Below, piece by piece: positions 9,981-62,668 of a DNA stretch of 64,000 nt. A program made the translations under genes and the position numbers. The stretch covers positions 62,001 through 126,000 of the IMG/VR virus record IMGVR_UViG_3300003877_000001; one strand, 5' to 3'. Numbering within the stretch: the stretch's first letter is position 1; the number at the start of each line of letters is the position of its first letter. Below the pieces are notes generated by a model, which saw nothing but the letters and a program-made list of their open reading frames with translations, was not told the origin of the DNA and did not search any database.

Positions 9981-10277
9981 ATGAAGAATTTTGAATATGA
10001 AATTAAATTAAATGATGATGGTAGACCTTATATCCACATAGATGATCCTAAGTTAGAAGTATCACATAGATTTGCATGTTTAGAATTAACTAAATACATG
10101 TTATTTGAGTTAATGAAAAATAAAGAGGAACTTCCTGAAGATTTTTTAAAAGATTTAGCAATAGCAGGTGATATGGTTAGCGGTATTTCAGATAAAATGG
10201 CTGATATATTAAAAGGTCAAATGAATGCTATGAGTGATCTTGATGATATGTTAAATACAGACACAGAAGACAAATAA
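9981..10277 (+). CDS. hypothetical protein
   Basis: ORF track. Confidence 0.5.
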   Translation: MKNFEYEIKLNDDGRPYIHIDDPKLEVSHRFACLELTKYMLFELMKNKEELPEDFLKDLAIAGDMVSGISDKMADILKGQMNAMSDLDDMLNTDTEDK

Positions 10278-40520: not shown

Positions 40521-42617
40521 ATGAAAATATTAAAAGAGAAAAAAAGAGAAATTCTTGAAAAAAAAGAAATTCTAAATAATGCTAAAATAAATTTAAAAAA
40601 AGAATTTGTTGGTATTGATGATGTAATAGATGAACTATTAGATGATATTCAATCTTGGTATCTATTTCCAGAAGGTCAAATAAGACCAACTATTATTAAT
40701 TTATGGGGTTTAACTGGTGTTGGTAAAACATCACTAGTTCAAGCTATGTTTAAACATATTAATTTAGACGACATTATATATAAATTTAATGTTGGTGATT
40801 ATGCTGGTCAGGGTGATGGTTCATTATCACATGTTTTCAGTAGAGATTTAAAAGATAAAGAAAATAAACCTGTTGCTGTAATGTTTGATGAATTCCAATT
40901 AGGTAGAACTATCGATGAAAATGGTGCTGAAGTTCAAAAATCAGGATTAAGGGTTATATGGGATTTACTTGATTCTGGTAAATTGGAACACATTGATTAT
41001 AGTTGGTCTGGTGGTGAAATAATGAGATTTGTTTATAAATTAGAAAAATGTGTTAATGAAGGTGTTGAAGTTGAAAATGGTATTATTACAAAAGGATTAA
41101 ATAAATTTAAAGATATTTTTGATCTTGATGATGAAGTTGAAGAAGAAGAAATAGCCGAACCTCAAACAACAGGTAGTGGTTCTAATAAAAAAATGGTAAA
41201 AAGAAGTAGCATACCTGAAAACTTCGTTATACCATCATCATATATTTATTCAATGAAGAATTGTTTTAATGATGAATATTATTCTGAAAATTTAATATAT
41301 GAAGCATTTAAAAATTTAAATGCAAAACAAACTATCGATTTATTAGAGTTAAAATTAAAAGTAGTCTTTAAACCTAGATTATATGATTATACTAAATCTT
41401 GTATATTCATTATAGGTAATTTAGATGAAGCATATCAAATGACATCACAAGTTTCACCAGATAATAATGCAGATGATTTCCATAAACATTCATTATCAAT
41501 CGGTTTAAGTGAAATTAAAGCATCATTAAAAACCAGATTTAGAGTTGAACAAATAGGTAGATTGGGAAATAATCATATTATTTACAAAGCATTTAGTTCT
41601 CAAACATATAGAGATTTAATTAATCTAGAATTAAATAGAGTAAAAAATGATATAATGGAAAGATTTGAAATTGATGTTAATTTCGATGATTCTATTAATG
41701 ACATCCTATATAAAGAAGGTGTATTTCCAACATTAGGAACAAGACCAGTATTTACAACAATCAATTCAATGATTGAATCAACAATGAGTAAAATTACATT
41801 GGATATTGCTATTTCTAGTAAAGATGTGGATCAAATAAATTGGTCTTTTGAATATGATGAAGATGCTTATCATATTATTGATTTTGTTCATAAAAATAAA
41901 ACCATATTAAATAAAAAATATGATGTTAAACTAAAATTAGAAAATAGAAGAAAATCTGATGGTAGTGAGATTCAATTATTAAATGCTGTACATGAAAGTG
42001 GACATGCAGTAACGTGTATGTTAATAATGGGTATCATTCCACAAGTTATTGTAAGTAAAACAAGTGAAAGTGATAATGCATTTACTAATTCAAAACAACC
42101 TAGTATGCATTTAAAAACTTGGTATGAAAATGATATTATTGTATCATTAAGTGGGATGATTGCTGAAAAAATGATTTTTGGTGAAGATTTCCAATCTAGT
42201 GGTTCTGAAAGTGATTTAGTAAGAGCAACTAATAATGCATTAATTGCAGCACAAAGATATGGTATGTTATCTGAAAATAGTGCATTTGGTATTCCTAATG
42301 CACCAACACAATATAATGAATTTAAAGATACTCAAGCAACAGATATTGAGGCAAAAACTTGGGTTAATGAATGTTATAAAGAAGCCGAAAAGTGTTTAAA
42401 TGAAAATAAAATATTATTAATAGAATTATCAAAATATCTATCCCAAAATTCTCAAATGAAAAAGGAACAAATAATTGAAGTTTTAGATAGATTAAATTAT
42501 AATGTTGATAATAAAGACTTAGAAAAATATTATAATTTACACGATAAATTTAATCATTTTGAAACTAAATATGAACTTGTAAGACCAAAAAGTCCTGCTC
42601 CAAGCATAATGGAATGA
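40521..42617 (+). CDS. AAA+ ATPase fused to M41 (FtsH-like) Zn peptidase
   Basis: GLTGVGKT, FDEFQ, AVHESGHA, L.G..AE...FG....G...DL..A. Confidence 0.85.
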   Translation: MKILKEKKREILEKKEILNNAKINLKKEFVGIDDVIDELLDDIQSWYLFPEGQIRPTIINLWGLTGVGKTSLVQAMFKHINLDDIIYKFNVGDYAGQGDGSLSHVFSRDLKDKENKPVAVMFDEFQLGRTIDENGAEVQKSGLRVIWDLLDSGKLEHIDYSWSGGEIMRFVYKLEKCVNEGVEVENGIITKGLNKFKDIFDLDDEVEEEEIAEPQTTGSGSNKKMVKRSSIPENFVIPSSYIYSMKNCFNDEYYSENLIYEAFKNLNAKQTIDLLELKLKVVFKPRLYDYTKSCIFIIGNLDEAYQMTSQVSPDNNADDFHKHSLSIGLSEIKASLKTRFRVEQIGRLGNNHIIYKAFSSQTYRDLINLELNRVKNDIMERFEIDVNFDDSINDILYKEGVFPTLGTRPVFTTINSMIESTMSKITLDIAISSKDVDQINWSFEYDEDAYHIIDFVHKNKTILNKKYDVKLKLENRRKSDGSEIQLLNAVHESGHAVTCMLIMGIIPQVIVSKTSESDNAFTNSKQPSMHLKTWYENDIIVSLSGMIAEKMIFGEDFQSSGSESDLVRATNNALIAAQRYGMLSENSAFGIPNAPTQYNEFKDTQATDIEAKTWVNECYKEAEKCLNENKILLIELSKYLSQNSQMKKEQIIEVLDRLNYNVDNKDLEKYYNLHDKFNHFETKYELVRPKSPAPSIME

Positions 42618-48011: not shown

Positions 48012-48656
48012 ATGGCAAGAAAACAAAAGAAATATCATTATTTGTATAAGACAACAAATAATTTAAACGGTAAATACTATTATGGTATGCATAGTACTGA
48101 TGATTTAAATGATGGTTATTATGGTTCAGGTAAAAGATTAAGATATTCGATTAATAAATATGGTAAAGAAAATCATAGTGTTGAAGTATTAGAGTTCTTT
48201 GAAAATAGAATTGATTTAAAAAATAAAGAAAAGGAGATTATTAATTTAAATGAAATTGCCAAAAAAGATTGTATGAATTTAGTTGTTGGTGGTGGTGGTG
48301 GATTAATAGGATTATCTGAAGACAAAAGAGAAAATATTCGTAATGGTGCATCTAAATTTTTAAAAGAAAAATGGAAAGACCCTTCATATAGAAAAATGCA
48401 AATAAAACTTTCTTCGGAAAGAATAAAAAAAACACATAAAGAAGGAAAACTTAAATATAATAATTTTAAAAATAAATATCATAATGAAGAAAGTAAAAGA
48501 AAAATGAGTGAATCTAGCAAGGGAATGGGAAAAGGGAAAAGTAACTCCCAATATGGAACATGTTGGATAACAAAAAATGATGTTAATAAAAAAATTAAAT
48601 TATTTGATTTAAATGACTATATAAAAAACGATTGGATTAAAGGTCGTATAATATAA
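48012..48656 (+). CDS. GIY-YIG (Seg-like) homing endonuclease with NUMOD3
   Basis: YLYKTTN..NGKYYYGMH..DGYYGSG; HNEESKRKMSES. Confidence 0.9.
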   Translation: MARKQKKYHYLYKTTNNLNGKYYYGMHSTDDLNDGYYGSGKRLRYSINKYGKENHSVEVLEFFENRIDLKNKEKEIINLNEIAKKDCMNLVVGGGGGLIGLSEDKRENIRNGASKFLKEKWKDPSYRKMQIKLSSERIKKTHKEGKLKYNNFKNKYHNEESKRKMSESSKGMGKGKSNSQYGTCWITKNDVNKKIKLFDLNDYIKNDWIKGRII

Positions 48657-48729: not shown

Positions 48730-48805
48730 GATCGGTTCGTCTAATGGAACTAGGATAGGTGGGGTCAAAAGCCACCAGATAGAGGTTTAAATCCTTTACC
48801 GATTA
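48730..48805 (+). tRNA. tRNA-Glu-like paralog with aberrant 9-nt anticodon loop
   Basis: Body similar to tRNA at 47889; GGTGG-GGTCAAAAG-CCACC; T loop TTTAAAT. Confidence 0.6.
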
Positions 48806-48806
48806 C

Positions 48807-48940
48807 TATGAATTGTTAGTGGTGGAACAGGTATACACTATCACCGTTGAAGGTGGTTTGTAGGGGTTATAGAAAACCCCTGCTGCATGGTAACATGTGG
48901 GACATCCCTTGTAGGTTCGAGTCCTACCTAGTGGTTCATA
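48807..48940 (+). ncRNA. enlarged tRNA-like RNA (Ser/Leu-type D arm, two extra hairpins)
   Basis: 13-bp terminal stem, GTGGAACAGGTATACAC, GTAGG-TTCGAGT-CCTAC. Confidence 0.75.
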
Positions 48941-49776: not shown

Positions 49777-50220
49777 ATGGTTGATAAAGAAATATGTAGA
49801 TTTAAATATGAAGATATTGAATATCAAATAAGCCATTTAATATTTCAATATGGTAATATTAAAATTTCAATGCCTAGTATATTAATTACAACCAAATCTT
49901 CTAATAGTAAAAGAAGTACATATGTAAGTAAAACTGATGGACATTATAACTTAGTTGGATTGAATAACCCAATTAAATTAATTAGAAAAATTAGTAATAT
50001 TTACAATGATGAACTTAAATCTTTTGATTATGTTTGTTTTAGTGCACATACAGATGCAACAGATAAATGTACTGAAGTATATGGTGGCATTCTTAATAAA
50101 ATGGGATTTGTTAAATTATTAAATAATAAATATTATCATTTTTATAGTAGAAAAGATAAAAAACTAAAACGTAAAGAAGTTGTTAAAATTTTTAAAGATT
50201 TTGAAATTTATTTACATTAA
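49777..50220 (+). CDS. hypothetical protein
   Basis: ORF flanked by direct repeats of the promoter motif. Confidence 0.55.
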   Translation: MVDKEICRFKYEDIEYQISHLIFQYGNIKISMPSILITTKSSNSKRSTYVSKTDGHYNLVGLNNPIKLIRKISNIYNDELKSFDYVCFSAHTDATDKCTEVYGGILNKMGFVKLLNNKYYHFYSRKDKKLKRKEVVKIFKDFEIYLH

Positions 50221-50264
50221 TATGTAACCTTTTAAAAAAGTTTACGTATATTTGAAATATAAAC

Positions 50265-50336
50265 GGAGCATTGGTCTAACGGCTAGGATATATGACTATC
50301 ACTCATAGGGTAGGGGTTCGATTCCCCTATGTTCCG
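50265..50336 (+). tRNA. tRNA-Asp(AUC)
   Basis: TATGA-CTATCAC-TCATA; GGAGCAT/ATGTTCC stem, G73. Confidence 0.88.
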
Positions 50337-50346
50337 CACTGGTCAT

Positions 50347-50465
50347 TAAAGTATGGTGTAATGTGCACGATACTTCCATGTACCGACCAACGATAGCCTA
50401 TTAGTATGGTGACAATAGGTTGGCAACAGAAGTAAAGGATTAAGGTTAAATTCCTTATTACTTGA
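50347..50465 (+). ncRNA. tRNA-like RNA with extended anticodon arm
   Basis: D arm TGGTGTAATGTGCAC, TACTTC/GAAGTA enclosing about 50 nt, T arm TAAGG-TTAAATT-CCTTA. Confidence 0.55.
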
Positions 50466-50481
50466 AGACCTAAAAAAATAT

Positions 50482-50621
50482 GCTGTAATGGAATGAAGTG
50501 AAAACGATAAAGTATAATGCATTGAAATATCGTGGAAACTATTAGTCACTAGCGATAATTGGCATTAATCATTTAACATAGGGGTAATTTCCTATTATGG
50601 GTTCGAGTCCCCAATATGGCA
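50482..50621 (+). ncRNA. enlarged tRNA-like RNA
   Basis: GCTGTA/TATGGC ends; GGG-TTCGAGT-CCC T arm. Confidence 0.55.
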
Positions 50622-50706
50622 CAAAATTATGGTATGATGGAATTGGTATACATGTGGGTGTGACCTTCGAAAGAATAGGTGCAGATCAAACGGATATGTT
50701 AACAAA

Positions 50707-50808
50707 TGAAGTAAAAGGGTTAAATGATGATTTAAATGTCTTGGCTTAAAATAGTTTCAATATTTAAATATGTAGTTTATCGTTAAGGTTCAATTCCTTA
50801 TACTTCAC
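50707..50808 (+). ncRNA. enlarged tRNA-like RNA
   Basis: TGAAGTA/TACTTCA ends; TAAGG-TTCAATT-CCTTA; ATTTAAAT long arm. Confidence 0.6.
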
Positions 50809-50909
50809 AAAAGTCTGGCAGAAGTATGCGATAGGTACGACAATACCGATAGCAGAAAATGAAGGACACATTGAACTCGAAGCATTGTCGTGTGGAGATA
50901 GTAAATGTT

Positions 50910-50981
50910 TAACTAGTGGACAAGTGGTAAAGTCGCCCCTTTTAAATGGGGAGAACGTGGGTTCGAATCCTACCTAGTTAA
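50910..50981 (+). tRNA. tRNA with UAA-containing loop, short variable region (identity uncertain)
   Basis: TAACTAG/CTAGTTA; CCCC-TTTTAAAT-GGGG; GTGGG-TTCGAAT-CCTAC. Confidence 0.7.
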
Positions 50982-51209
50982 CTAAACTTCTGTGATGTGG
51001 AAGAATTGAAGTTCATGTTTGTTTAATATTTGGGTCGCTCCTGAATACTGACAATAAAGAATAGTTTATATTTGAGGTGAGTACGTATTAACCGATATAT
51101 GAAGTTACTATTTTGAATGAACGCACTTCGCACTCGTCAAAGGGAGAGAAAGCAGGTTCGATACCTGTCTACGCTACAAATATTATATCAAACGGATATA
51201 ATTTAAAAT

Positions 51210-51364
51210 TAACTAATGGCAGAGTGGCTTAATGCGGATGTCTAGTTCTATATGATTGATAGAGGGTGAACTTCTTTATCTTTTGCTCATGAACGGAAAC
51301 AATTACCCTGATTACGAGAAGCAAATATCGAAAGGGGTCATAGGTTCGAATCCTATTTAGTTAG
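51210..51364 (+). ncRNA. enlarged tRNA-like RNA with insertion in the anticodon loop
   Basis: TAACTAA/TTAGTTA; TGGCAGAGTGGCTTAATGC; GATGT/ATATC; ATAGG-TTCGAAT-CCTAT. Confidence 0.78.
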
Positions 51365-51397
51365 CAATATTATATCAAACGGATATAATGAAAATAT

Positions 51398-51616
51398 GAG
51401 GATGTGGTGGAAAGGTAAACACGCTTGTTTTAGAATAAGTACAAAGTTCATTTGGGAATAAATAATACTGATGAAGAGATGAATACCATAATGCTTACTG
51501 CTTAGTTGAACCAAGTTACCCTTCGGGATATGTCGGTAAAATAGAAATCGAAATCTAAATGATAGTAGAGGTAAGAGAGAAAGTCTGGTTTGAGGGTTCG
51601 AGTCCTTCCATCTTCA
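51398..51616 (+). ncRNA. 219-nt tRNA-Leu(UAG)-like RNA with giant variable region
   Basis: GAGGATG/CATCTTC+A; TGGTGGAAAGGTAAACAC; CTTG-TTTTAGAA-TAAG; GAGGG-TTCGAGT-CCTTC. Confidence 0.78.
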
Positions 51617-51655
51617 CTAAATTATATCAAACGGATATAATAAAAATTGAAATAT

Positions 51656-52009
51656 GGGGGTAACAGGAATTGACAGGATACGATAGGTAGACGGTGCAAG
51701 TATGAGGAAATTGCTCTACTCATTAAAAATAGGTAATGAACGTTTAAGTGGCGAAGCACTTGCAATGGCAGCATAACCGAAAGGTTTTTGTACCATTCGA
51801 GATACCACCAACTAGGTAGGTGTTCTCATAGATACTGATCACGTAAAGAGATCAAAAAATGTTGTGGAACATAAAACCAAAAAGTCTAATGTAATAAAGT
51901 GTTTGTAAATAAAAAACATAATGACTTAAAAATAATAAACAAACTAAACTTGTGAATGACTTTTTATTTGTAATATAACTGGACAGGAGTTCAAGTCTCC
52001 TTACTTCCA
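51656..52009 (+). ncRNA. ssrA: tmRNA, tag (A)GEALAMAA
   Basis: GGGGGTA..GGAATTGAC 5' end; tag ORF 51750-51776; TAAACTTGTGAA; GGAC-AGGAG-TTCAAGT-CTCCT-TACTTCC-A with G3.U70. Confidence 0.95.
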
Positions 52010-52015
52010 CAATAT

Positions 52016-52112
52016 GGTGATCTATTGGTATCTACACGCCTTTCATCGGGAAGTAGAAGGATAACTTTAATGATGAATATGAGTTATATTGGTTCGAATC
52101 CCCTGATCGCCA
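52016..52112 (+). ncRNA. non-canonical tRNA-like RNA
   Basis: GGTGATC/GATCGCC+A; GG-TTCGAAT-CC; two internal hairpins. Confidence 0.55.
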
Positions 52113-52130
52113 CTTAAATAAAAAACTAAT

Positions 52131-52544
52131 ATGGATATTGAAAAGTTTAAAAGGGATATGAAAGAAGATATGGAAAATCCTGATGGTTTCTTTGCTAGAT
52201 TGGCAAAAAAAAATGCTAATCTTGAGAAAAGATATAATAAATTTGAAAAATGGTTAGAAACAAACGAGTTTGAACCTATTTTCCAAAAATTGCTAGAAAA
52301 AAATGGTGATGAAAGAAGTACATATTGTTTTAATAAAGGACATGAAAAAAATGGTACACCTTTAATGGAATTTCTTTGTGGCTATATAACTACTAGAATT
52401 GAAACTGTTGAAAATGAAAAATTTAGTGGTGATTTTAGTTCTGGTATTTGGTTTTTTAAAGATTATTGGTTTCAATTAATTTGTGGTCAAGGATGTTTTT
52501 GGAAAATATATAATAAAGATTTTGAATGTATTGAACACGTATAG
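52131..52544 (+). CDS. hypothetical protein
   Basis: ORF track; ..GQG.F.. motif. Confidence 0.6.
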   Translation: MDIEKFKRDMKEDMENPDGFFARLAKKNANLEKRYNKFEKWLETNEFEPIFQKLLEKNGDERSTYCFNKGHEKNGTPLMEFLCGYITTRIETVENEKFSGDFSSGIWFFKDYWFQLICGQGCFWKIYNKDFECIEHV

Positions 52545-52613
52545 TGGAGCAATACTTGAAATGGTTAGAAGCCTTAAATGAAAATAGAGAATTAAGAATA
52601 AGATTAAATAAAG

Positions 52614-52811
52614 ATGTTTAATATAGGTTTTTTAATTGATAGATATTGGTGGGATATTAAACATAATAAACCACATAATTCTTTAATTGAAGGAGATACC
52701 TCTACAACAACTAACTTAGGATATTTTAAATTAGTAGATGATGAATATAAATTAACAGAGGAAGGTATTAAAAGTTATAAAAAAATGAGAAGAAATAATG
52801 AGAAAGAATAA
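52614..52811 (+). CDS. hypothetical protein
   Basis: ORF track. Confidence 0.4.
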   Translation: MFNIGFLIDRYWWDIKHNKPHNSLIEGDTSTTTNLGYFKLVDDEYKLTEEGIKSYKKMRRNNEKE

Positions 52812-52855
52812 AATACATAGTGAACGATTATCCACCACTGAAGCAGATTTAAGAT

Positions 52856-52930
52856 GCCAGCGTGGTGGACGTGGGAATACACGACATTTTTAAGCGATGT
52901 TTTTCGAGGGTTCGAGTCCCTCCGTTGGTA
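52856..52930 (+). tRNA. tRNA-Leu(UAA) with short variable loop
   Basis: GCCAGCG/CGTTGGT+A; ACATT-TTTAAGC-GATGT; variable loop TTTTC. Confidence 0.82.
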
Positions 52931-52981
52931 CTAATTTATTTTCGAATAGGCACACATAAAAAAATAAATCTAAAAAAGAAA

Positions 52982-53239
52982 ATGAGTGCAATAAACAACA
53001 GGGAGTATCCTAAATGTATATTTTGTGGAAAATTTTGCTTTAAACATAAAAGAAAATATTGTTCAAGAGATTGTTATAATAAAGACATGGAATTAAATAT
53101 TCCTAAAGTACCTGAATTATTAAAAATGTTTAAAAAATATAAAACATTTGTTAGGGTTGGGAAAGAATTTAATGTAAGTGATAATGCTGTTAGAAAATGG
53201 TGTATTAAATATGGTATATTAGAAATGATTAATAAATAA
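52982..53239 (+). CDS. Zn-finger/HTH protein (homing endonuclease remnant)
   Basis: CIFCG..YCSRDC; VGKEFNVSDNAVRKW; start re-called to MSAIN because the listed start lies in a tRNA. Confidence 0.55.
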   Translation: MSAINNREYPKCIFCGKFCFKHKRKYCSRDCYNKDMELNIPKVPELLKMFKKYKTFVRVGKEFNVSDNAVRKWCIKYGILEMINK

Positions 53240-53245
53240 TATAAA

Positions 53246-53509
53246 ATGAATAAAACAGAAATAAAGAAAGCATTATATAAGCAAAAGCCAAAGGCTGAAT
53301 TTACACATATTAGAAGAGGTATTGCTTATTATAATACAATATTAAGAATAGAAGAAGAACCATATAGTCATTCAGTATTTTTTGAAATACCTGTTGATGA
53401 TATGGGTGATGCAGACTTTGATAAGCAAATGGATGCAAAATTACTTAATCGTTGGATTGTTGATATACTCATTTTAACAAAAAAAGAAGGTGATTTAAAA
53501 ATGCCCTAA
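53246..53509 (+). CDS. conserved phage hypothetical protein
   Basis: EIKKALYKQKPKA...F.IP..DMGDA.F...M.AKLL.RW. Confidence 0.65.
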   Translation: MNKTEIKKALYKQKPKAEFTHIRRGIAYYNTILRIEEEPYSHSVFFEIPVDDMGDADFDKQMDAKLLNRWIVDILILTKKEGDLKMP

Positions 53510-53587
53510 TGGTGAAAAGGTAGACACGGCAGGTTCAAACCCTGTTGCTAATAAACTGGCGTGTAGGTTCGAATCCTACTTAGGGTA
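53503..53587 (+). tRNA. tRNA-Leu(CAA)
   Basis: GCAGG-TTCAAAC-CCTGT; long variable arm; A73. Confidence 0.93.
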
Positions 53588-53588
53588 C

Positions 53589-53906
53589 ATGAATGGAAAA
53601 GATGATATTGTTGGTGCAAAATTTGCTTTAGTTAAAGAAGGTGATTTAGTTGTTCATATGAGTAGGGAATCTTATGATGATTTAATGCATGAAGTTATTG
53701 AAGAGTTAAGAAAACAAATTATGATTAAAGTAAAAGAAGTTACAAAGTATATGGATGGTGGAACAACTAAATATATTGATGAAAAAGGTAATGAATATTT
53801 TAAAGACAATAGATTAGGTACAAAAACTAAAGGTAAAATTTTTGATAAATATCCTAAAGAAGAAGATGCTAAAATATTAGATGTTGAACTTGAAATATTA
53901 TTGTGA
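53589..53906 (+). CDS. hypothetical protein
   Basis: ORF track; DGGT motif. Confidence 0.5.
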   Translation: MNGKDDIVGAKFALVKEGDLVVHMSRESYDDLMHEVIEELRKQIMIKVKEVTKYMDGGTTKYIDEKGNEYFKDNRLGTKTKGKIFDKYPKEEDAKILDVELEILL

Positions 53907-54096
53907 TGAACAAAGACATTTAGTGTGTGTTCCTTATTCAAAAGAGAACCTACATTTGATGGCTGATGATTTAAACATCAAAAGATGTTGGTTTCATAAA
54001 GATCATTATGATATACCTAAAAGAAGAATAAAAGAAATAAGTGCAAAGTGCACAATAATTAATAGTAAAGAAATAGTTAAAATAATAAGAAAATGA
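53881..54096 (+). CDS. DUF4031-like protein
   Basis: HL....LH.MA..L.IKR.WF...HYDI. Confidence 0.65.
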   Translation: MLNLKYYCDEQRHLVCVPYSKENLHLMADDLNIKRCWFHKDHYDIPKRRIKEISAKCTIINSKEIVKIIRK

Positions 54097-54186
54097 ACAG
54101 AATTAACAACATATTTGAAAGTGAACAAGAGATTAATTCTGCTCTAGTGATATAGTATAACGGTCACCGAGCAGACGTAAAACTAT

Positions 54187-54261
54187 GCTCGGTTGGACAA
54201 CGGTAGGTTAAGTCACCACCCTTTCAAGGTGGTATAACGGGTTCGACCCCCGTACCGAGTA
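54187..54261 (+). tRNA. tRNA-Glu(UUC)
   Basis: CCACC-CTTTCAA-GGTGG. Confidence 0.93.
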
Positions 54262-54500
54262 CAAAAATAATAAATTTAAAGAGTCATATTGATTAGTGGG
54301 TTGGGTTTGATTTCGACTGTTACTCTGATCAGGGGTGTTATTAGCGGTTTAAAACGTGAACACATTTGTAAGTATTTGGTAGGTAAGTTCGACTCTTGCT
54401 ACTTATTAACAACACTAATTAATTTAACTTTTAAAATATGATTAGTTATCATATAAAAATATACTTAACTATTAACATATTGGTAGTTATAATGAAATAT

Positions 54501-54586
54501 TGTGAGTTGGAGAAGTTGGTATCTCGCTGGTTTCATAAGCCAGAGTCCCTACGGGGTTTACGGGGGTTCGAATCCCTCACTCGCTA
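54501..54586 (+). tRNA. initiator-like tRNA(CAU) with extra variable hairpin
   Basis: 1:72 mismatch; CTGGT-TTCATAA-GCCAG; variable CCC-TACG-GGG. Confidence 0.85.
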
Positions 54587-54817
54587 CTAAAAAGAATTAA
54601 AAATAAATAAGAAAATTGTAACATATTAAAAATATTTACGTATATTTGTAATATAACAGACAACAAAAGTTCCTATAATTTATATTTGGATAAAAAATAC
54701 TTTTCGTCTGTTTTTTTATAAATTAAAACATAAAGGTAAATGATGTTCCTATAAAACTCAATAGGGGAAACCCTATTTTTACTGTAAATACATCTCACCT
54801 TTTTAAAAAATTAAATT

Positions 54818-56572
54818 ATGAAAACTTTAGAACTATTTAATGCGGTTGTAAAAAAAGATACAAAAGATAATGTTTTTGTATCAGAAGATGGATATATTAT
54901 CGAATCTGGTGCTTTATGGGCAAAAGATAGAATTGTAACCTATTATAATAGTCGTAGATTAAATGGTAATGATTTAAATAAAACATTTCATAAATCATGG
55001 TTAAAAATAAAAAATAGTTCAAGATATGAACTATTGGTTGATCAAATAAAACATTATATATCTACATATGGTAGTGGATTTAAAGATGATGTTTATATCC
55101 CTGATGAAGTATTAGATATTTCAGGATTAAAAATATCATTTAAAGTTGTTAAAGCATATACTAAAGATGAATTAATTGATAAATCATTATCATTACTTCA
55201 ATCTGGTATTGCTTTGAAAGAAGAAACAATAAATGATTTATTATCAATTCTTGTAGATGAACTTGATTATGAATTTACTGGTAAAGAAAATATTCGTAAC
55301 AAAGAAGCAATAATTAAAATTGCAGATATATATGGGGTATTACCAATAGATACTATGGAGTTTTTTAGATATATTATCTATCGTACAACAGGACAATCAT
55401 TATTAATTAAAAATTATAAAATGATTGAATTGATAAAAGATAGTAATTATAATCCATCTGCACAATTTAAGAAATTTGGATTAGAAAAACTTTCTGAAAT
55501 ATTTAATAGATTTAAGCCGTTATTTTTAGCTTTTAAACCTAAATGTAGTGGTACTATTAATAGAATTTCAAAGTTATCTAAAAAATATCATAAGCCACTT
55601 CTTAGTAATCCATTAAATGAAGTAACTTCGGTTACATTTAATGAAGGTGATGATCACTGGTTAGATAATGCAACACCATTTGCTTTATTTAAAGCATTGT
55701 CTGCTTGTTGGACAAGAATGAATGGACAAGATGCTTTTGTATATAGAATTAGAAATGGTAAATCATTTGCTAAGATGAATTCTACTGATGCAGGTATTGC
55801 AGGATATAATTATGGACATATTCTTAATTATATTAAAAATAGATTTGATCTTTCAGGTAAGAAAATATTTCTTCCAGAAGATGTAGAATATGCTTTACCA
55901 ACATCTGAAAAGATGTACGTAGGTAATGTTCCAACAGGAACAAGATTCTATGGTAATGCTCTTGCTGTTGGTATTTATTGGAAAAACTCTTGGGGTGCAA
56001 CTGACCTTGATTTATCTGGTTTGAATATCGGTGGAAAAGTCGGTTGGAATTCAGATTATAAACAAGGTGGATCATTGTATTTCTCTGGTGATATTACCAA
56101 CGCACCTAATGGTGCTGTTGAGTATCTTTATGCAAATAGAGGACTTAGTGAACCAACTTTGGTAATGAATAATGTATTTAGTGGAAACCCTGATTCAGAA
56201 TTCAAGATCATCGTAGGTAAAGGTGATAATATCAATAAGAATTATATGATGAACCCTGAAAAGTTGTTCGTGGATATTAAGACACAATCAGTTCAAACTC
56301 AAAGTGTGTTAGGTATATTTCTTCCAGTTGGTAACGAGAGACAATCTTTTGTTATTTTGAACTTCGGTTCTGGTAGAGAACATATTTCTAGTTATGGTGA
56401 AGTTGCAAATATAACAACAAAGGCACTTTATCAACAATGGAACAATGCACTTACTTTGAGAGAAGTAATTGGAAAATTAGGTGTTGAATTTGTTACTGAT
56501 CCTGAAAAGGCAGATAATGATTTAAGTTTAAATACAATTGAAAAAGATTCTATAATGAATCTTTTTATATAA
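54818..56572 (+). CDS. stress-related protein with C-terminal TerD-like motifs
   Basis: GIYW....DLDLS...GWN....FSGDITNAP.GA.EY. Confidence 0.6.
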   Translation: MKTLELFNAVVKKDTKDNVFVSEDGYIIESGALWAKDRIVTYYNSRRLNGNDLNKTFHKSWLKIKNSSRYELLVDQIKHYISTYGSGFKDDVYIPDEVLDISGLKISFKVVKAYTKDELIDKSLSLLQSGIALKEETINDLLSILVDELDYEFTGKENIRNKEAIIKIADIYGVLPIDTMEFFRYIIYRTTGQSLLIKNYKMIELIKDSNYNPSAQFKKFGLEKLSEIFNRFKPLFLAFKPKCSGTINRISKLSKKYHKPLLSNPLNEVTSVTFNEGDDHWLDNATPFALFKALSACWTRMNGQDAFVYRIRNGKSFAKMNSTDAGIAGYNYGHILNYIKNRFDLSGKKIFLPEDVEYALPTSEKMYVGNVPTGTRFYGNALAVGIYWKNSWGATDLDLSGLNIGGKVGWNSDYKQGGSLYFSGDITNAPNGAVEYLYANRGLSEPTLVMNNVFSGNPDSEFKIIVGKGDNINKNYMMNPEKLFVDIKTQSVQTQSVLGIFLPVGNERQSFVILNFGSGREHISSYGEVANITTKALYQQWNNALTLREVIGKLGVEFVTDPEKADNDLSLNTIEKDSIMNLFI

Positions 56573-56719
56573 ATATTAAAGACGATTAGTAACACGTTGG
56601 CTTCGTGTTGAAATTGTGGGATAACGTGCCTGATAGCTGAAAAGCAAAAAGAACCACCCACTGAAAGGAAAGTTCGCAACTAAACCTGCTTTTCTAGTTT
56701 GAAACGTAAACTAGTATAT

Positions 56720-56803
56720 CGTGAGTTGGAGAAGTGGCATCTCGCTGTCCTCATAAGGTAGAGTCCCTACGGGTTTACGAAGGTTCGAGTCCTTCACTCG
56801 CTA
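56720..56803 (+). tRNA. initiator-like tRNA(CAU) with extra variable hairpin, copy 2
   Basis: C1:U72; CTGTC-CTCATAA-GGTAG; variable CCC-TACG-GG. Confidence 0.85.
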
Positions 56804-57460
56804 CTAAACTATAAGAATATGAAAAATAACATACCGCTTGGAAGCGGAATACATGTTAAATACTGTTACAGGTTCGTTGAGAACTTCACGTTTTTCTATC
56901 TCGTTAATCGAACAAGGTTAATCACCTTTTGCGGATCACGAATAGAATTTATCGGTGATTCCTCTCCCCCTTTATAGTCAAGATACTAATTATACTTGTG
57001 GATGTGCATGTATTAGAATGATATTAAATCATTTTTATGCACGATCCATTTAGAGGTGCTAAATCAAATTTCCAAATAAAGAAGTTTCTTAGAAATAATT
57101 GGAACATTAATCATAAAAAATATAATGTATCAGATAGTTATTATTCCGATTTAGTATTTGATCCAAAGATGGATAGAAAACGTTATTGGTTAGCATATAA
57201 GAAGGGGGATTAATTCTTCTTTCTTTTTAAAAATTTTTAAACTATATTTGTATTATGAGAAGTTTTGATTAAAGCAAAAAAATAATGGATAATACAATTG
57301 GAATATTTTTAATAACAAAGTTGTGAAAGTATGGTTGAAATTGATGGTTAAAAACCATTTCCAGAAGTAGATAAATTTAAATGGGTTGATTTTGATGATG
57401 CATTAGAATTAATTCATGATACACAAGTAATAGCATTAAATGAATATATAAGAAAATAAA

Positions 57461-58108
57461 ATGAAAATATTATTAATTAGTGATAGTCATGGACTACACA
57501 AAGCATGGGAAAAAATCTTCCCCCTCCCTAAAGTTGATATGATAATTCATGCAGGTGATCTAACTAATGTAGGTGCAATTCATGAAATGAATGAATTTAT
57601 GTTTTGGTTTAAGAATCTTGATATTGAATATAAAATAATGATTGCAGGAAATCACGATAAAGGTCTTGATAATTTTAACAGATATACTATGCTTGATATG
57701 ATTCAAGATAGTGAAATCCATTATCTTGAAGATTCTGGAGTAGAGATTGAAGGAATTAAGTTTTGGGGTTCACCTATGACACCACCATTTTTCAATTGGG
57801 CATTTATGCGTGACGAAGAACAAATCAAAAAGCATTGGGATGCAATTCCTGATGATACTGATTTTCTAATCACTCACGGTCCTGCCAATGGTATTTTGGA
57901 TTGGGTTGATTATAAAAATGGTGGAAGTGTAGGGTGTCCTTATCTTCTTGAAACAATTCAAGAAAGAGTGAAGCCTAAATATCATGTATTTGGTCATATA
58001 CATGAGATGTATGGGACTAGAGTAGTTGGTGAGACTACACATATATGTGCATCTGTTTTAGATGGTAGATATCATCCTGTTAGATCAGGCATTATAATTA
58101 ATTTCTGA
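57461..58108 (+). CDS. calcineurin-like metallophosphoesterase
   Basis: SDSH, HAGD, AGNHD, THGP, FGHIHE. Confidence 0.93.
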   Translation: MKILLISDSHGLHKAWEKIFPLPKVDMIIHAGDLTNVGAIHEMNEFMFWFKNLDIEYKIMIAGNHDKGLDNFNRYTMLDMIQDSEIHYLEDSGVEIEGIKFWGSPMTPPFFNWAFMRDEEQIKKHWDAIPDDTDFLITHGPANGILDWVDYKNGGSVGCPYLLETIQERVKPKYHVFGHIHEMYGTRVVGETTHICASVLDGRYHPVRSGIIINF

Positions 58109-60406: not shown

Positions 60407-60901
60407 ATGAAAAAACATATTCTTAATGAAAGAATAAGAGGCTCTGAAATTAGATTAGTAGGACATCAAATTTATGAAAATAATATTATACCAACTGCCG
60501 AAGCATTAAATTTAGCAAATACAGAAGGGTTAGACTTGGTATTAATAAATCCAAACGAGTCACCTGCTATTTGTAAGATTATGGATTATAATAAATTCAC
60601 ATATAATCAAAAAAAGAATGAAAAGAAAAGTAGTTCTCCAAAACTAAAAGAAATAAAATTTACTCCAAATATTACTGACAATGATTTGAATGTAAAAGTA
60701 AAACAAGCTAGAAAATTTCTTGAAAAGGGAAGTGTAATTAACATACATGTATTCTTTAAAGGAAGAGAAATTGCACATAAAGATAGAGGTAAGGAAGTAT
60801 TATTTAAATTCTTAAACGAACTTATAGATATTGGTATATTTAATTTGGATATAGTCTTTAAAGGAAAAAGAATTATCCACCAAATAAGACCTAAAAGATA
60901 G
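60407..60901 (+). CDS. infC: translation initiation factor IF-3
   Basis: NE.IR..EIRLV, GLDLV.I.P...P..CKIMDY.KF, KEIKF.P.I...D, F.GRE. Confidence 0.95.
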   Translation: MKKHILNERIRGSEIRLVGHQIYENNIIPTAEALNLANTEGLDLVLINPNESPAICKIMDYNKFTYNQKKNEKKSSSPKLKEIKFTPNITDNDLNVKVKQARKFLEKGSVINIHVFFKGREIAHKDRGKEVLFKFLNELIDIGIFNLDIVFKGKRIIHQIRPKR

Positions 60902-60954: not shown

Positions 60955-61590
60955 TTGAAATTAATTGAAATGGTTCAAAAATGGTTGGAATATGATGGTA
61001 AAATATATCACAAAAAAACAACACATGAATTAGCACATTCAATCACTATTACATCAAAAAATATGGTTACAAAATTAAATGAACATAATGTAACCCCAAA
61101 CAAAAGTTTTACGTATAAATATAATAACATTGCATTGTTTAATGAATTTTTACAGGGTTATGTTGAGGGTGATGGTTGTGTTGGAATATATAATAGTTCA
61201 ACAACTGACTATTATTATATTAGTTTTTTTGGTAATGAAGATTTTAAAGATAGTATTATAAATTTATTACCTACAAAACCTAAACTAAGAAAAGTTAATA
61301 ATAAATTTTATGAAATTAAATTTTTGGGTAAAATAGGAATTGAATTTAGTGATTGGTTATAGAATGACCCAATATATATTGATAGTCCTAAATATAAAAA
61401 ATATATTGACTTTAAAAAAAATTATTTAACTAAGACAAAATATTATAAATATGGTTTATTAAATAGAAAAATAGATAATTTATTAAATGAAAATGTAGAA
61501 CCAAAAATTATAGCAGAAAAACTTAATATTAATAAAAGGACTGTATATAATTATAAATATAATAAGAAAAATGGAAAAAATACTTACTAA
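60955..61590 (+). pseudogene. degenerate LAGLIDADG endonuclease
   Basis: FLQGYVEGDG; the frame continues past TAG at 61360 into an HTH-like tail. Confidence 0.6.
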
Positions 61591-62668
61591 AATAGAATGG
61601 AGTGTTATTAATGAATATATTGAAAAGGGTTTATTAATTACTAATAAACACCCAACTAAAGATATATGGGTTCTAAATTATTCTAAAACATGTGCATTTG
61701 AAAAGGAATGGGATTTAATTACATTATCTTGTCGTGGACTTTTTGTTGACATCGATGGTAATATTGTTGGTCGAAGCATGAAAAAATTCTTCAATTTAGA
61801 AGAACACGATCCTTCTGATATTCCAACTGATTTATCATTTGAAGCATTTGAAAAAATGGATGGTTCATTGGGTATTTTATTTAATTATGAAGGTGATTGG
61901 ATATTTGCTTCAAGAGGTTCATTTGAATCAGAACAAGCCATTAAAGGTGGTGAAATCATGCTTAATATTGAAAATTCTTATAGATTTTTAAATGGTGATA
62001 ATACATATGTATTTGAAATTATATATCCTGAAAATCGTATTGTTATTGATTATGGTAAGACTGAAGATTTGGTTCTTTTAGGTGTTATCAATACTGATGG
62101 TGGTGATGAAATGTCATATGATGATATGGTGTATAATCACTCTGATGAATTTACTATTGTTGAAAAGTATGATGTAACATCTGATATTTCTAAATTAAAG
62201 GAATTAGAAGAAGATAACAAAGAAGGATTTGTTGTACGTTATTCTAATGGCTTCCGTGTAAAAGTAAAATTCGATGAATATTGCAGATTACATAGAATCG
62301 TTACTAACGTATCTAATAAGACAATTTGGGAATCATTGAAAAATGGTGAAGGATTGGATGAAGTTATTGATAGAGTTCCTGATGAATTCTACAATTGGGT
62401 TAGACGTACTGAAAAGGGTTTAAATGATATGTATATTGAAATTGAAGTTGAAACATTACGTGAATTCGTTAGGGTAACTAATTTAGTTAGTTTGAAAAAT
62501 GGATTTGATCCTTTTGAAAGAAAGAAAGAATTTGCTTTAATAGCAAAAGAATTTAAACATTCTGGATTATTATTTTCTATGTATAATAATAAAAATTATT
62601 CTGAAGCAATTTGGAAAATGATTAAACCAGACTGGTCAACACCATTTAGAGATGGGTATGAAAATTAG
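61571..62668 (+). CDS. RNA ligase (T4 Rnl1-like)
   Basis: CRG, KFFN, EKMDGS, FE, EGFVV, RVKVK..Y..LH. Confidence 0.92.
   Translation: MEKILTKIEWSVINEYIEKGLLITNKHPTKDIWVLNYSKTCAFEKEWDLITLSCRGLFVDIDGNIVGRSMKKFFNLEEHDPSDIPTDLSFEAFEKMDGSLGILFNYEGDWIFASRGSFESEQAIKGGEIMLNIENSYRFLNGDNTYVFEIIYPENRIVIDYGKTEDLVLLGVINTDGGDEMSYDDMVYNHSDEFTIVEKYDVTSDISKLKELEEDNKEGFVVRYSNGFRVKVKFDEYCRLHRIVTNVSNKTIWESLKNGEGLDEVIDRVPDEFYNWVRRTEKGLNDMYIEIEVETLREFVRVTNLVSLKNGFDPFERKKEFALIAKEFKHSGLLFSMYNNKNYSEAIWKMIKPDWSTPFRDGYEN

What the first reader, a model, noticed from the sequence alone, without database searches (positions are those of the whole stretch)
51398..51616. 219-nt tRNA-Leu(UAG)-like RNA directly before tmRNA
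It has a Leu-type D arm, a 7-bp acceptor stem, A73 and a T arm, with an irregular UAG loop and about 140 nt in the variable position (including a CC-TTCG-GG hairpin). LeuRS largely ignores the anticodon, so it could still be charged.
Basis: partly seen in the sequence, partly recalled or inferred. Interest (0 to 1): 0.6.

Follow-up and report, generated by a model that had tools for sequence, protein, structure and literature searches.

The report
Interrupted leucine tRNA gene in phage
A giant vent-water phage carries a leucine tRNA gene whose anticodon loop is split by 135 unrelated bases with no sign of self-splicing, so it is most likely a young broken copy, though it resembles the unexplained "introns" reported in other huge phages.

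Summary
The tRNA-like element at 51398-51616 is real. Rfam's tRNA model matches these exact coordinates (30.4 bits, cut-off 29). All 20 stem pairs and the universal nucleotides are intact.

The extra ~135 nt is best placed in the anticodon loop, just after UAG, and a normal class-II variable arm follows.

The insert is A-rich and less structured than shuffled sequence. It matches no Rfam ribozyme or group I intron. It is not repeated in the genome and was found in no other phage.

Two close relatives lack the whole cassette. The genome, a 326-kb T4-like jumbo phage from a hydrothermal vent, has a second, uninterrupted tRNA-Leu(UAG).

The element lies in a variable array of tRNA and tmRNA cassettes and remnants, 39 nt upstream of a tmRNA. 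The array also holds a homing endonuclease gene.

At least five further tRNA-like genes, one in this phage and four in relatives, carry unrelated, lineage-specific anticodon-loop inserts.

The acceptor stem has G3·U70 plus A73, the alanine determinants.

Best reading: a young, non-decoding interrupted copy (0.45). Rivals: a protein-spliced intron (0.25), or a functional unspliced tRNA-like RNA (0.17).

The parts
51361..51389 (+). Spacer repeat (TATATCAAACGGATATAAT, a 7-bp hairpin) with a promoter-like TTAGCA-17-TATAAT that ends 8 nt before the tRNA start
   Evidence: Repeat family D3. Promoter-like site scoring 10/12. Further copies lie at about 51179-51202 and 51621-51643.
51398..51433 (+). 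5' exon: acceptor 5' strand, Leu-type D arm, 5' strand of the anticodon stem, and UUUUAG
   Evidence: Rfam alignment, ARAGORN, alignment to relatives' tRNA-Leu.
51434..51568 (+). 135-nt insert in the anticodon loop. Boundaries can slide -3/+1 nt. It is 40% A and contains the weak CC-UUCG-GG hairpin at 51520-51527.
   Evidence: ARAGORN. MFE -13.5 kcal/mol, z = +1.8 against dinucleotide shuffles. No Rfam family. Single copy in the genome.
51569..51616 (+). 3' exon: A(37)G(38), 3' strand of the anticodon stem (GUAAG), 14-16-nt variable arm, T arm, acceptor 3' strand with U70, and A73. No CCA is encoded.
51621..51643 (+). Next copy of the spacer repeat, between the element and the tmRNA
51656..52012 (+). 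tmRNA with the tag GEALAMAA*
   Evidence: Rfam RF00023, 43 bits, E 1e-14. Synteny with tmRNAs of 9 relatives.
51210..51365 (+). Neighbouring cassette: a tRNA-like gene with a 76-nt insert in its anticodon loop. The joined loop reads CUAGCAA.
   Evidence: ARAGORN. It is 96.9% identical in a relative's contig whose flanks are about 89% identical, Fisher p = 6e-4.
48012..48656 (+). Homing endonuclease gene inside the tRNA array
   Evidence: phrog_314, E 3e-34.
61571..62668 (+). T4 Rnl1-type RNA ligase, the enzyme class that seals breaks in tRNA anticodon loops. It would be needed for the protein-splicing rival.
   Evidence: PF09511, E 1e-19. phrog_562, E 7e-68.

Best explanation
The element is a class-II tRNA-Leu(UAG)-type gene interrupted in its anticodon loop by 135 nt of unrelated, A-rich, poorly structured DNA.

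Shown:
- the gene, the position of the insert and the absence of any ribozyme signature;
- the cassette-like setting, between copies of a 19-27-nt spacer;
- its absence from close relatives;
- the presence of an intact second tRNA-Leu(UAG) in the same genome.

Inferred:
- The cassette is transcribed with the tRNA/tmRNA array, perhaps from the promoter-like spacer.
- RNase P and 3' processing trim it to a roughly 219-nt RNA.
- This RNA keeps a normal acceptor/T/D half, so it could be aminoacylated. Leucine is possible through A73 and A14, and alanine through G3·U70.
- It has no usable 7-nt anticodon loop, so it does not decode.

On this reading it is a young, non-decoding by-product of the rapid turnover of tRNA cassettes in this phage. 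That turnover involves duplication, recombination at spacer repeats and endonuclease-driven exchange. The element would be on its way to becoming one of the decayed tRNA and tmRNA remnants that surround it.
For: - The insert is in the anticodon loop and the exons are intact.
- The insert folds worse than shuffled sequence (z +1.8). The whole element gives z +1.14.
- No group I intron or other ribozyme family matches in the region at E <= 10. No group I intron matches anywhere in the genome at E <= 1.
- The insert is single-copy in the genome.
- It shows no similarity to the exons or to the spacer.
- Nothing in the phage collection resembles the region.
- Exact-word scans of IMG/VR, JGI metagenomes and GTDB genomes found only the same phage or chance hits.
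- None of 24 relatives matched at the DNA level.
- Contigs of two close relatives skip the cassette, joining 51393->51691 and 51056->51616. Depth is zero over 51404-51571 in four runs.
- An intact tRNA-Leu(tag) lies at G000 145808-145891.
- The neighbourhood holds remnants: orphan T arm/acceptor ends at about 50599, 51153 and 52085, and a decayed tmRNA-like copy at about 50685-50806.
- A homing endonuclease gene lies in the array.
- T4-type tRNA regions are known to be reshuffled by the SegB endonuclease (PMC13096335).
Against: - Every stem pair and every universal nucleotide of the exons is intact, which is not what an old pseudogene looks like.
- The insert lies exactly where all known tRNA introns lie. 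Removing it restores a canonical loop with U33 and A37.
- At least five more tRNA-like genes carry unrelated inserts, again in the anticodon loop of an otherwise intact cloverleaf. One is in this phage and four are in relatives.
- That placement is more frequent than random insertion into any loop would give. However, the detection methods favour intact cloverleaves.
- The neighbouring interrupted tRNA is better conserved in a relative than its flanks.
- Lak megaphage tRNAs carry conserved 'enigmatic introns' (bioRxiv 10.1101/356790).
Confidence: 0.45

Rival explanations
1. The insert is a true intron of a non-ribozyme kind. An unidentified endonuclease, from the host or the phage, cuts both junctions. 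The phage's T4-type healing and sealing enzymes then rejoin the halves. The kinase/phosphatase would heal the ends and Rnl1, the ligase specialised for anticodon-loop breaks, would seal them. The product would be a working 84-nt tRNA. This would be the same kind of thing as the 'enigmatic introns' of Lak megaphage tRNAs.
For: - The insert is in the anticodon loop, and the junction is compatible with the canonical 37/38 site.
- The exons are perfect, and removal of the insert restores a canonical 7-nt loop.
- Unrelated anticodon-loop inserts recur in intact tRNA-like genes of this clade.
- The genome encodes Rnl1 (window 61571-62668), two Rnl2-type ligases, a 306-aa P-loop kinase and a metallophosphoesterase.
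- There is a precedent in Lak phages.
- The Pnk/Rnl1 tRNA repair pathway is established in T4 (PMC3014915).
Against: - No cutting enzyme is known or found. The genome has no EndA-type splicing endonuclease and no RtcB.
- There is no bulge-helix-bulge motif. The only complement to the loop (CUAAA) lies 12-16 nt from the 3' junction.
- The inserts of the different genes share no motif.
- The insert is unique to one phage lineage and the gene is redundant.
- RNA ligase and kinase genes are standard in T4-like phages, so they are not specific evidence.
- Protein-only tRNA splicing has never been shown in bacteria (my own knowledge).
Confidence: 0.25
2. The unspliced 219-nt RNA is the functional product. 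Several forms of this idea are possible:
- a tRNA-shaped scaffold that carries an unstructured A-rich arm;
- a decoy for host nucleases that target tRNA anticodon or variable loops;
- a non-decoding amino-acid carrier, charged by LeuRS (which ignores the anticodon) or by AlaRS through G3·U70.

For: - The acceptor/T/D half is intact with A73 and A14 (PMC9976931).
- G3·U70 with A73 is otherwise exclusive to tRNA-Ala among 457 tRNAs of the clade.
- The unspliced RNA can form its own stem, CUUGU/AUAAG (direct reading of the sequence).
- The interrupted genes found so far are mostly of the Leu type.
- T4 itself makes two stable RNAs of unknown role from its tRNA region (PMC3014915).
- Phage tRNAs are known to counter tRNA-cleaving defences (PMC10264068, listed; PMC13096335).
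Against: - The insert is not conserved anywhere, and close relatives do without the cassette.
- The insert has no structure and no motif.
- The search model was built from tRNA-Leu, so the Leu-type bias may be an artefact.
- G3·U70 can arise by a single C-to-U change.
- The 23-codon open frame in the insert is not beyond chance in this composition.
Confidence: 0.17
3. The insert is a self-splicing group I intron, as in the tRNA-Leu(UAA) genes of cyanobacteria, or another self-cleaving ribozyme.
For: The host gene type and the anticodon-loop position are those of bacterial tRNA group I introns. The insert contains a CUGAUGA word, as in the hammerhead core.
Against: - At 135 nt the insert is well below the 200 nt or more of known tRNA group I introns (my own knowledge).
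- No Rfam Intron_gpI, hammerhead, twister, pistol or hatchet match appears at E <= 10, and no group I match appears anywhere in the genome.
- Folding energy is worse than for shuffled sequence.
- No G-C closing pair for a hammerhead stem II flanks the CUGAUGA...GAAA words.
Confidence: 0.02

Closest known systems
'Enigmatic introns' in tRNA genes of Lak megaphages (Devoto et al., bioRxiv 10.1101/356790)
   Same: These are huge-phage tRNA genes that are too long for bacterial tRNA finders and are recognised only when an intron is allowed. The inserts were not reported as belonging to any known intron class, although the authors tested them against Rfam. The mechanism is unknown. The authors remark that such tRNAs may be common in large phages.
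   Different: Lak introns are conserved, often identical, across cohorts and hosts. The insert here is a singleton that close relatives lack. The phage clade is different (T4-like, hydrothermal vent or marine), and the genome is a jumbo phage of about 326 kb rather than about 540 kb.
Group I introns in bacterial and plastid tRNA genes, such as tRNA-Leu(UAA) (review PMC3984707)
   Same: Both involve a leucine tRNA gene interrupted in the anticodon loop.
   Different: The insert has no group I core, is too short and is poorly structured. There is no Rfam match.
Archaeal and eukaryal protein-spliced tRNA introns (bulge-helix-bulge; review PMC4090602, listed)
   Same: The position is compatible with the canonical 37/38 site, and the intron sequence is arbitrary.
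   Different: There is no bulge-helix-bulge motif, no splicing endonuclease homologue and no RtcB in the genome. The virus carries bacterial-type tmRNA and IF3, so its host is a bacterium.
T4 tRNA region: RNAC and RNAD stable RNAs, SegB endonuclease, and Pnk/Rnl1 anticodon-loop repair (PMC3014915; PMC13096335)
   Same: A T4-like phage has a tRNA array that also encodes non-tRNA stable RNAs of unknown role. A homing endonuclease sits in the array, and a ligase able to seal anticodon-loop breaks is encoded.
   Different: No sequence relation to RNAC or RNAD was tested. T4 tRNA genes are not interrupted.
tmRNA
   Same: Both have a tRNA-like acceptor end with G3·U70 and A73 flanking a long internal segment. 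The element is adjacent to a true tmRNA. The insert has a 23-codon open frame that ends in UAG.
   Different: The element has a full D arm, anticodon stem and variable arm, which tmRNA lacks. It has no pseudoknots, and its only tmRNA-family match is a weak partial hit (tmRNA_permuted, 19.3 bits, E 0.89). The tag-like frame ends in MLTA, not in an (A/L)AA-type ending, and is not beyond chance.

Membership tests
tRNA (Rfam RF00005), class II leucine type | Cloverleaf that scores above the family's gathering score | tested here: met
   30.4 bits against 29, over model positions 1-71, even with a 137-nt insertion penalised. ARAGORN calls Leu(tag). All 20 of 20 stem pairs are standard.
tRNA (Rfam RF00005), class II leucine type | A contiguous 7-nt anticodon loop in the gene product | tested here: not met
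   The loop is interrupted by 135 nt. The unspliced alternative has a 6-nt loop (direct reading).
tRNA (Rfam RF00005), class II leucine type | Leucine identity: A73, A14, and a long variable arm with a Leu-type D arm | tested here: met
   A73, A14, G18G19 and a 14-16-nt variable arm are present. The element aligns with the clade's tRNA-Leu. Identity rules come from PMC9976931. Charging itself is not testable here.
tRNA-Ala identity (AlaRS substrates, including tmRNA) | G3·U70 with A73, G4-C69, G2-C71 and G20 | tested here: inconclusive
   G3·U70, A73 and G4-C69 are present. Pair 2:71 is A-U, and position 20 is not G. In 457 tRNAs of the clade, G3·U70 with A73 occurs only in tRNA-Ala.
Group I intron | Conserved P3-P8 core detectable by a covariance model, and a stable fold | tested here: not met
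   No RF00028 match at E <= 10 in the region or at E <= 1 in the genome. The insert has MFE z = +1.8 and is 135 nt long.
Archaeal/eukaryal spliced tRNA intron | Bulge-helix-bulge at the junctions, and a splicing endonuclease | tested here: not met
   No 3-nt bulge / 4-bp helix / 3-nt bulge is possible at any allowed junction (constrained fold; direct reading). PF01974 is absent and RtcB is absent.
tmRNA (RF00023 / RF04321) | tRNA-like domain without an anticodon arm, pseudoknots, and a tag frame with a hydrophobic (A/L)AA-type end | tested here: not met
   The only tmRNA-family match touching the element is a weak one to RF04321 at 51561-51776 (19.3 bits, E 0.89). It overlaps only the last part of the element. 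A full anticodon stem and D arm are present.
Lak-type 'enigmatic' phage tRNA introns | A huge-phage tRNA gene with an unclassifiable insert in the anticodon loop | tested here: met
   for the element.
Lak-type 'enigmatic' phage tRNA introns | Insert conserved among related phages | tested here: not met
   No relative holds it. The 21-nt insert of relative G006 is likewise absent from its orthologues.
Lak-type 'enigmatic' phage tRNA introns | Removal from the RNA | not testable with these tools
   No RNA run holds the region.

The most novel reading that the evidence does not exclude
These anticodon-loop inserts may be real introns that are removed without a ribozyme. Under this reading an endonuclease cuts both junctions and the phage's own T4-type kinase/phosphatase and Rnl1 ligase reseal the anticodon loop. 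Six unrelated inserts were seen: two in this phage (76 and 135 nt) and four in relatives (21 to about 52 nt). That would be protein-dependent tRNA splicing in a bacterial virus. It would also give a physiological role to the phage tRNA repair enzymes beyond countering host nucleases. A variant of this reading is that the unspliced, G3·U70-bearing RNA is a non-decoding amino-acid carrier or a decoy.
Probability: 0.2. Interest if true: 0.85.

Novelty: new member of a known kind. Interest (0 to 1): 0.4.

Why it matters
If the insert is only a break, the element is a snapshot of how phage tRNA arrays gain and lose genes. It also warns that default tRNA finders miss such genes.

If the insert is removed, bacteria-infecting viruses would have a non-ribozyme form of tRNA splicing, which has not been shown in the bacterial world. 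The unexplained introns of Lak megaphages would then gain a second, independent system to study.

The G3·U70 pair on a leucine-type body also raises a question. It asks whether phages make tRNA-like molecules whose charging and decoding identities are deliberately uncoupled.

Tried and rejected
- **Group I intron, hammerhead and other ribozymes.** No Rfam match, and the fold is poor. The CUGAUGA...GAAA words lack a stem II.
- **Bulge-helix-bulge intron.** No such motif is possible, and there is no EndA or RtcB.
- **Insert as a decayed tandem copy** (3' half + spacer + 5' half). The alignment is no better than shuffles, z = -1.5. Local similarity to the exons or to other tRNA-Leu genes is also within chance.
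- **Mobile element (MITE or IS).** The insert is single-copy in the genome and has no terminal inverted repeats. Only a 4-nt TAGA repeat marks the junctions.
- **Protein-coding insert.** The plus strand has only a 23-codon frame. The minus strand has an 86-codon open frame without an ATG, which is explained by the purine-rich plus strand. tblastx found nothing.
- **Mini-tmRNA.** Rejected; see the membership test.
- **Shared motif among the seven interrupted loops.** Shared 7- and 8-mers are within the shuffle range.
- **Homologue searches that found nothing useful.**
  - INPHARED phages by blastn.
  - IMG/VR word scans of the insert, the spacer and both exons. These gave only the identical contig L002 or chance hits.
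  - JGI metagenomes with the spacer, chance hits only.
  - GTDB genomes with the 3' exon, one chance hit inside a coding region.
  - 24 relatives by blastn.
- **RNA evidence.** No run on record as RNA holds the region.
- **Joined exons.** No external search was made with the joined exons. They were joined only inside scripts, for alignment and pair counting.
- **Read laying.** Reads were laid on 1,231 letters.

Full report
**Setting.** The window is G000:C1:62001-126000 of a 325,854-bp virus record that CheckV rates as complete. It encodes a T4-type major capsid protein, portal and large terminase. GC content is 23-33%. The only sequencing run that holds the region in full is a hydrothermal-vent metagenome. 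The finding lies in a 20-kb island of translation genes:
- about two dozen tRNA genes;
- a tmRNA;
- IF3, a T4 Rnl1-type RNA ligase and a metallophosphoesterase.

More than 160 related contigs exist in IMG/VR, with capsid identity of 69-84% among the 80 kept. Many of these are genomes of 320-365 kb with the same tRNA island.

**The observation.** Default ARAGORN and the Rfam gathering scan of the whole window did not report the element. A more permissive Rfam scan of 50000-57000 matched the tRNA model at exactly 51398-51616. The score was 30.4 bits against a gathering score of 29. That alignment places 137 nt inside the anticodon loop and 14 nt in the variable arm.

- All 20 stem pairs of the joined exons are standard, 16 Watson-Crick and 4 G·U.
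- U8, A14, G18G19, U33, A37, the T-loop GUUCGAGUC and A73 are all present.
- The joined exons align along their whole length with uninterrupted class-II tRNA-Leu genes of related phages.
- The junction is ambiguous by -3/+1 nt, because TAGA occurs at both ends.
- The insert starts with AUAAG, which mimics the true 3' stem strand GUAAG.

The better-supported anatomy is still an insert in the anticodon loop followed by a regular variable arm.

The tmRNA claim holds. RF00023 matches 51656-52012 at 43 bits, below the cut-off of 47, with E 1e-14 and the tag GEALAMAA*. Nine relatives have tmRNAs of 68-112 bits at the syntenic place.

**What the insert is not.**
- It has no match to any Rfam family, including group I introns and the small self-cleaving ribozymes, at E <= 10.
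- The whole genome has no group I intron match at E <= 1.
- Its minimum free energy (-13.5 kcal/mol for 135 nt) is worse than that of dinucleotide shuffles, z = +1.8. The whole element gives z = +1.14.
- No bulge-helix-bulge can be drawn at any allowed junction. The genome has neither a splicing endonuclease nor RtcB.
- It is single-copy in the genome and has no terminal inverted repeats.
- It does not resemble the exons, other tRNA-Leu genes or a tandem-duplicate junction.
- It gives nothing by tblastx. Its open frames are within what this base composition gives by chance.

**Distribution.**
- The only other IMG/VR contig holding the insert is identical over the region.
- Word scans with both exons, the insert and the spacer found only that contig or chance matches. 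These scans covered IMG/VR, JGI metagenomes and one genome per prokaryote species.
- Blastn against 24 related genomes found only the T arm and parts of the tmRNA.
- In the relatives, tRNA-Leu(tag) genes are uninterrupted.

The most informative result came from contigs of four other public runs laid on 50900-52130. None covers 51404-51571.
- One 922-nt contig (run X3) matches 51060-51184, 51200-51393 and 51691-52104. It joins 51393 to 51691 with 45 other letters between.
- A 2,078-nt contig (run X5) joins 51056 to 51616 with 119 other letters between.

Close relatives therefore lack the whole cassette, and the cassette boundaries coincide with a repeated spacer. The genome also has an intact tRNA-Leu(tag) at G000 145808-145891, so this copy is redundant for decoding.

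**The neighbourhood.** Three successive units end in the same spacer, TATATCAAACGGATATAAT, which forms a 7-bp hairpin. The units lie at about 51075-51172, 51210-51365 and 51398-51616. In two copies the spacer makes a promoter-like -35/-10 pair.
- The first unit is a remnant with a T arm but no acceptor partner.
- The second is a tRNA-like gene with a 76-nt insert, again in the anticodon loop.
- Further remnants lie at about 50599-50625 and 52016-52112. The latter resembles a tRNA-Met.
- A decayed tmRNA-like copy lies at about 50685-50806.
- A homing endonuclease gene sits in the array at 48012-48656.

In T-even phages the SegB endonuclease is known to drive exchange and amplification of tRNA segments (PMC13096335). 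The picture is of an array in rapid birth-and-death turnover.

**Evidence that complicates the pseudogene reading.**

1. *Other interrupted genes.* A covariance model built from 20 tRNA-Leu genes of the clade and ARAGORN together found more long tRNA-like genes in relatives:
   - G006 53909-54016, with a 21-nt insert;
   - G006 274512-274631, with a 29-nt insert;
   - G017 18292-18408, with a 39-nt insert;
   - G008 (L105 17827-17985), 159 nt long.

   ARAGORN alone added a weaker candidate, G004 (L092 17590-17702, 39-nt insert), whose joined loop lacks U33.

   For the first three of the four, the programs place the extra sequence between the two strands of an intact anticodon stem. For G008 that placement is my own reading of the sequence, because the covariance model puts the extra sequence in the variable arm. 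The inserts share no motif. The 21-nt insert is absent from its orthologues. Each insert is therefore a lineage-specific singleton. Their restriction to the anticodon loop of otherwise intact genes is more than random breakage would give. However, both detection methods favour intact cloverleaves, and the model favours Leu-type bodies.

2. *Conservation of the neighbour.* The neighbouring interrupted gene is 96.9% identical in the X3 contig, while its flanks, including the tmRNA, are about 89% identical (Fisher p = 6e-4). This fits either selection or recent cassette exchange.

3. *Repair enzymes.* The phage has the enzymes that reseal broken anticodon loops in T4. These are Rnl1, two Rnl2-type ligases, a 306-aa P-loop kinase and a metallophosphoesterase (PMC3014915). 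They are standard equipment in T4-like phages, so they are not specific evidence.

4. *Precedent.* Lak megaphages were reported to have tRNAs with 'enigmatic introns' that are conserved across cohorts. I found no later paper that explains them.

Pair 3:70 of the acceptor stem is G·U, with A73 and G4-C69. These are three of the five bacterial alanine determinants (PMC9976931). Among 457 tRNAs called in this genome and 21 related loci, G3·U70 with A73 occurs only in tRNA-Ala. No tRNA-Leu has it. The element could therefore be a substrate of AlaRS as well as LeuRS. It could equally be one C-to-U change away from an ordinary pair. The tmRNA next door also has G3·U70, as all tmRNAs do, but the element has a full D arm and anticodon stem and is not tmRNA-like in any other respect.

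**Verdict.** The element is real and is correctly recognised as a tRNA-Leu(UAG)-type gene.
- **Most likely reading (0.45).** It is a recently interrupted, non-decoding copy in a fast-turning cassette array. It is transcribed and end-processed into a tRNA-shaped RNA that may be charged but cannot read codons.
- **A protein-spliced intron (0.25).** This would be of the same unexplained kind as in Lak phages.
- **A functional unspliced tRNA-like RNA (0.17).** It could act as a decoy, a scaffold or a non-decoding amino-acid carrier.
- **A ribozyme intron (0.02).** This is close to excluded.

None of the surviving readings can be settled without RNA data or a biochemical test. No RNA run holds this phage.

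I file the element as a new member of the known but unexplained kind 'interrupted tRNA genes of huge phages', of moderate interest.

Noticed in passing
window 51210-51365: A second tRNA-like gene has a 76-nt insert in its anticodon loop. The joined loop reads CUAGCAA, giving the anticodon AGC, but the acceptor stem UAACUAA lacks G3·U70. In a relative's contig it is 96.9% identical, while the flanks are about 89% identical.
   Followed up: partly
window 54501-54587 and 56720-56804; relatives' loci L091-L111: The clade carries many class-II-length tRNAs (83-93 nt, with a long variable arm) whose anticodons are normally class I: Met, Gln, Pro, Lys, Trp, Glu, Thr, Asn, Cys, Gly and Phe. They often sit beside a 72-76-nt tRNA with the same anticodon. 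Conversely, there are 73-76-nt tRNAs with Leu anticodons at window 50910-50982 and 52856-52931.
   Followed up: no
window 48730-48806 and 50265-50337: One tRNA has a 9-nt anticodon loop (GGUCAAAAG). A tRNA-Asp has A at position 34 (anticodon AUC). Both are unusual for bacterial-type tRNAs.
   Followed up: no
window 48812-48937: A tRNA-like sequence has a Leu-type D arm, a 6-nt 'anticodon' loop (GUUGAA) and about 50 extra nt with two hairpins before a good T arm. ARAGORN calls it Ser(tga) with a 29-nt intron. Rfam's tRNA model does not match it.
   Followed up: partly
window ~50685-50806: This is a decayed tmRNA-like copy. A 43-nt stretch is 74% identical to the spacer plus the 5' end of the real tmRNA. 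The T arm and tail (TAAGGTTCAATTCCTTA TACTTCAC) resemble those of the tmRNA. It has a tag-like frame that ends in ...DLNVLA*.
   Followed up: partly
window ~50599-50625, ~51075-51172, 52016-52112: Orphan T-arm and acceptor 3' ends, and a degenerate tRNA-Met-like sequence, lie in this stretch. None is called as a tRNA by Rfam's tRNA model. They look like remnants of tRNA genes.
   Followed up: partly
G000:C1:157717-157787 (outside the window); L101 14501-14573; L103 10160-10234: tRNAs with the anticodon CUA (amber-suppressor type) occur in this phage and in relatives. This hints at TAG read-through or recoding. The window's ORFs were read with table 11 only.
   Followed up: no
window 10277-12697: A UvrD-type helicase gene appears to be interrupted by an intein (Intein_splicing match at residues 254-547).
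   Followed up: no
window 40521-42617, 57461-58108, 60407-60901, 61571-62668: The phage encodes an FtsH-like AAA+/M41 protease, a calcineurin-type phosphoesterase, translation initiation factor IF3 and a T4 Rnl1-type RNA ligase around the tRNA island.
   Followed up: partly
L105 17827-17985 (-), = relative G008: A 159-nt Leu-type tRNA-like gene, by my reading, has about 52 extra nt after CCAAG in the anticodon loop and an enlarged variable arm (AUCCC...GGGAU). The covariance model instead places the extra sequence in the variable arm.
   Followed up: partly
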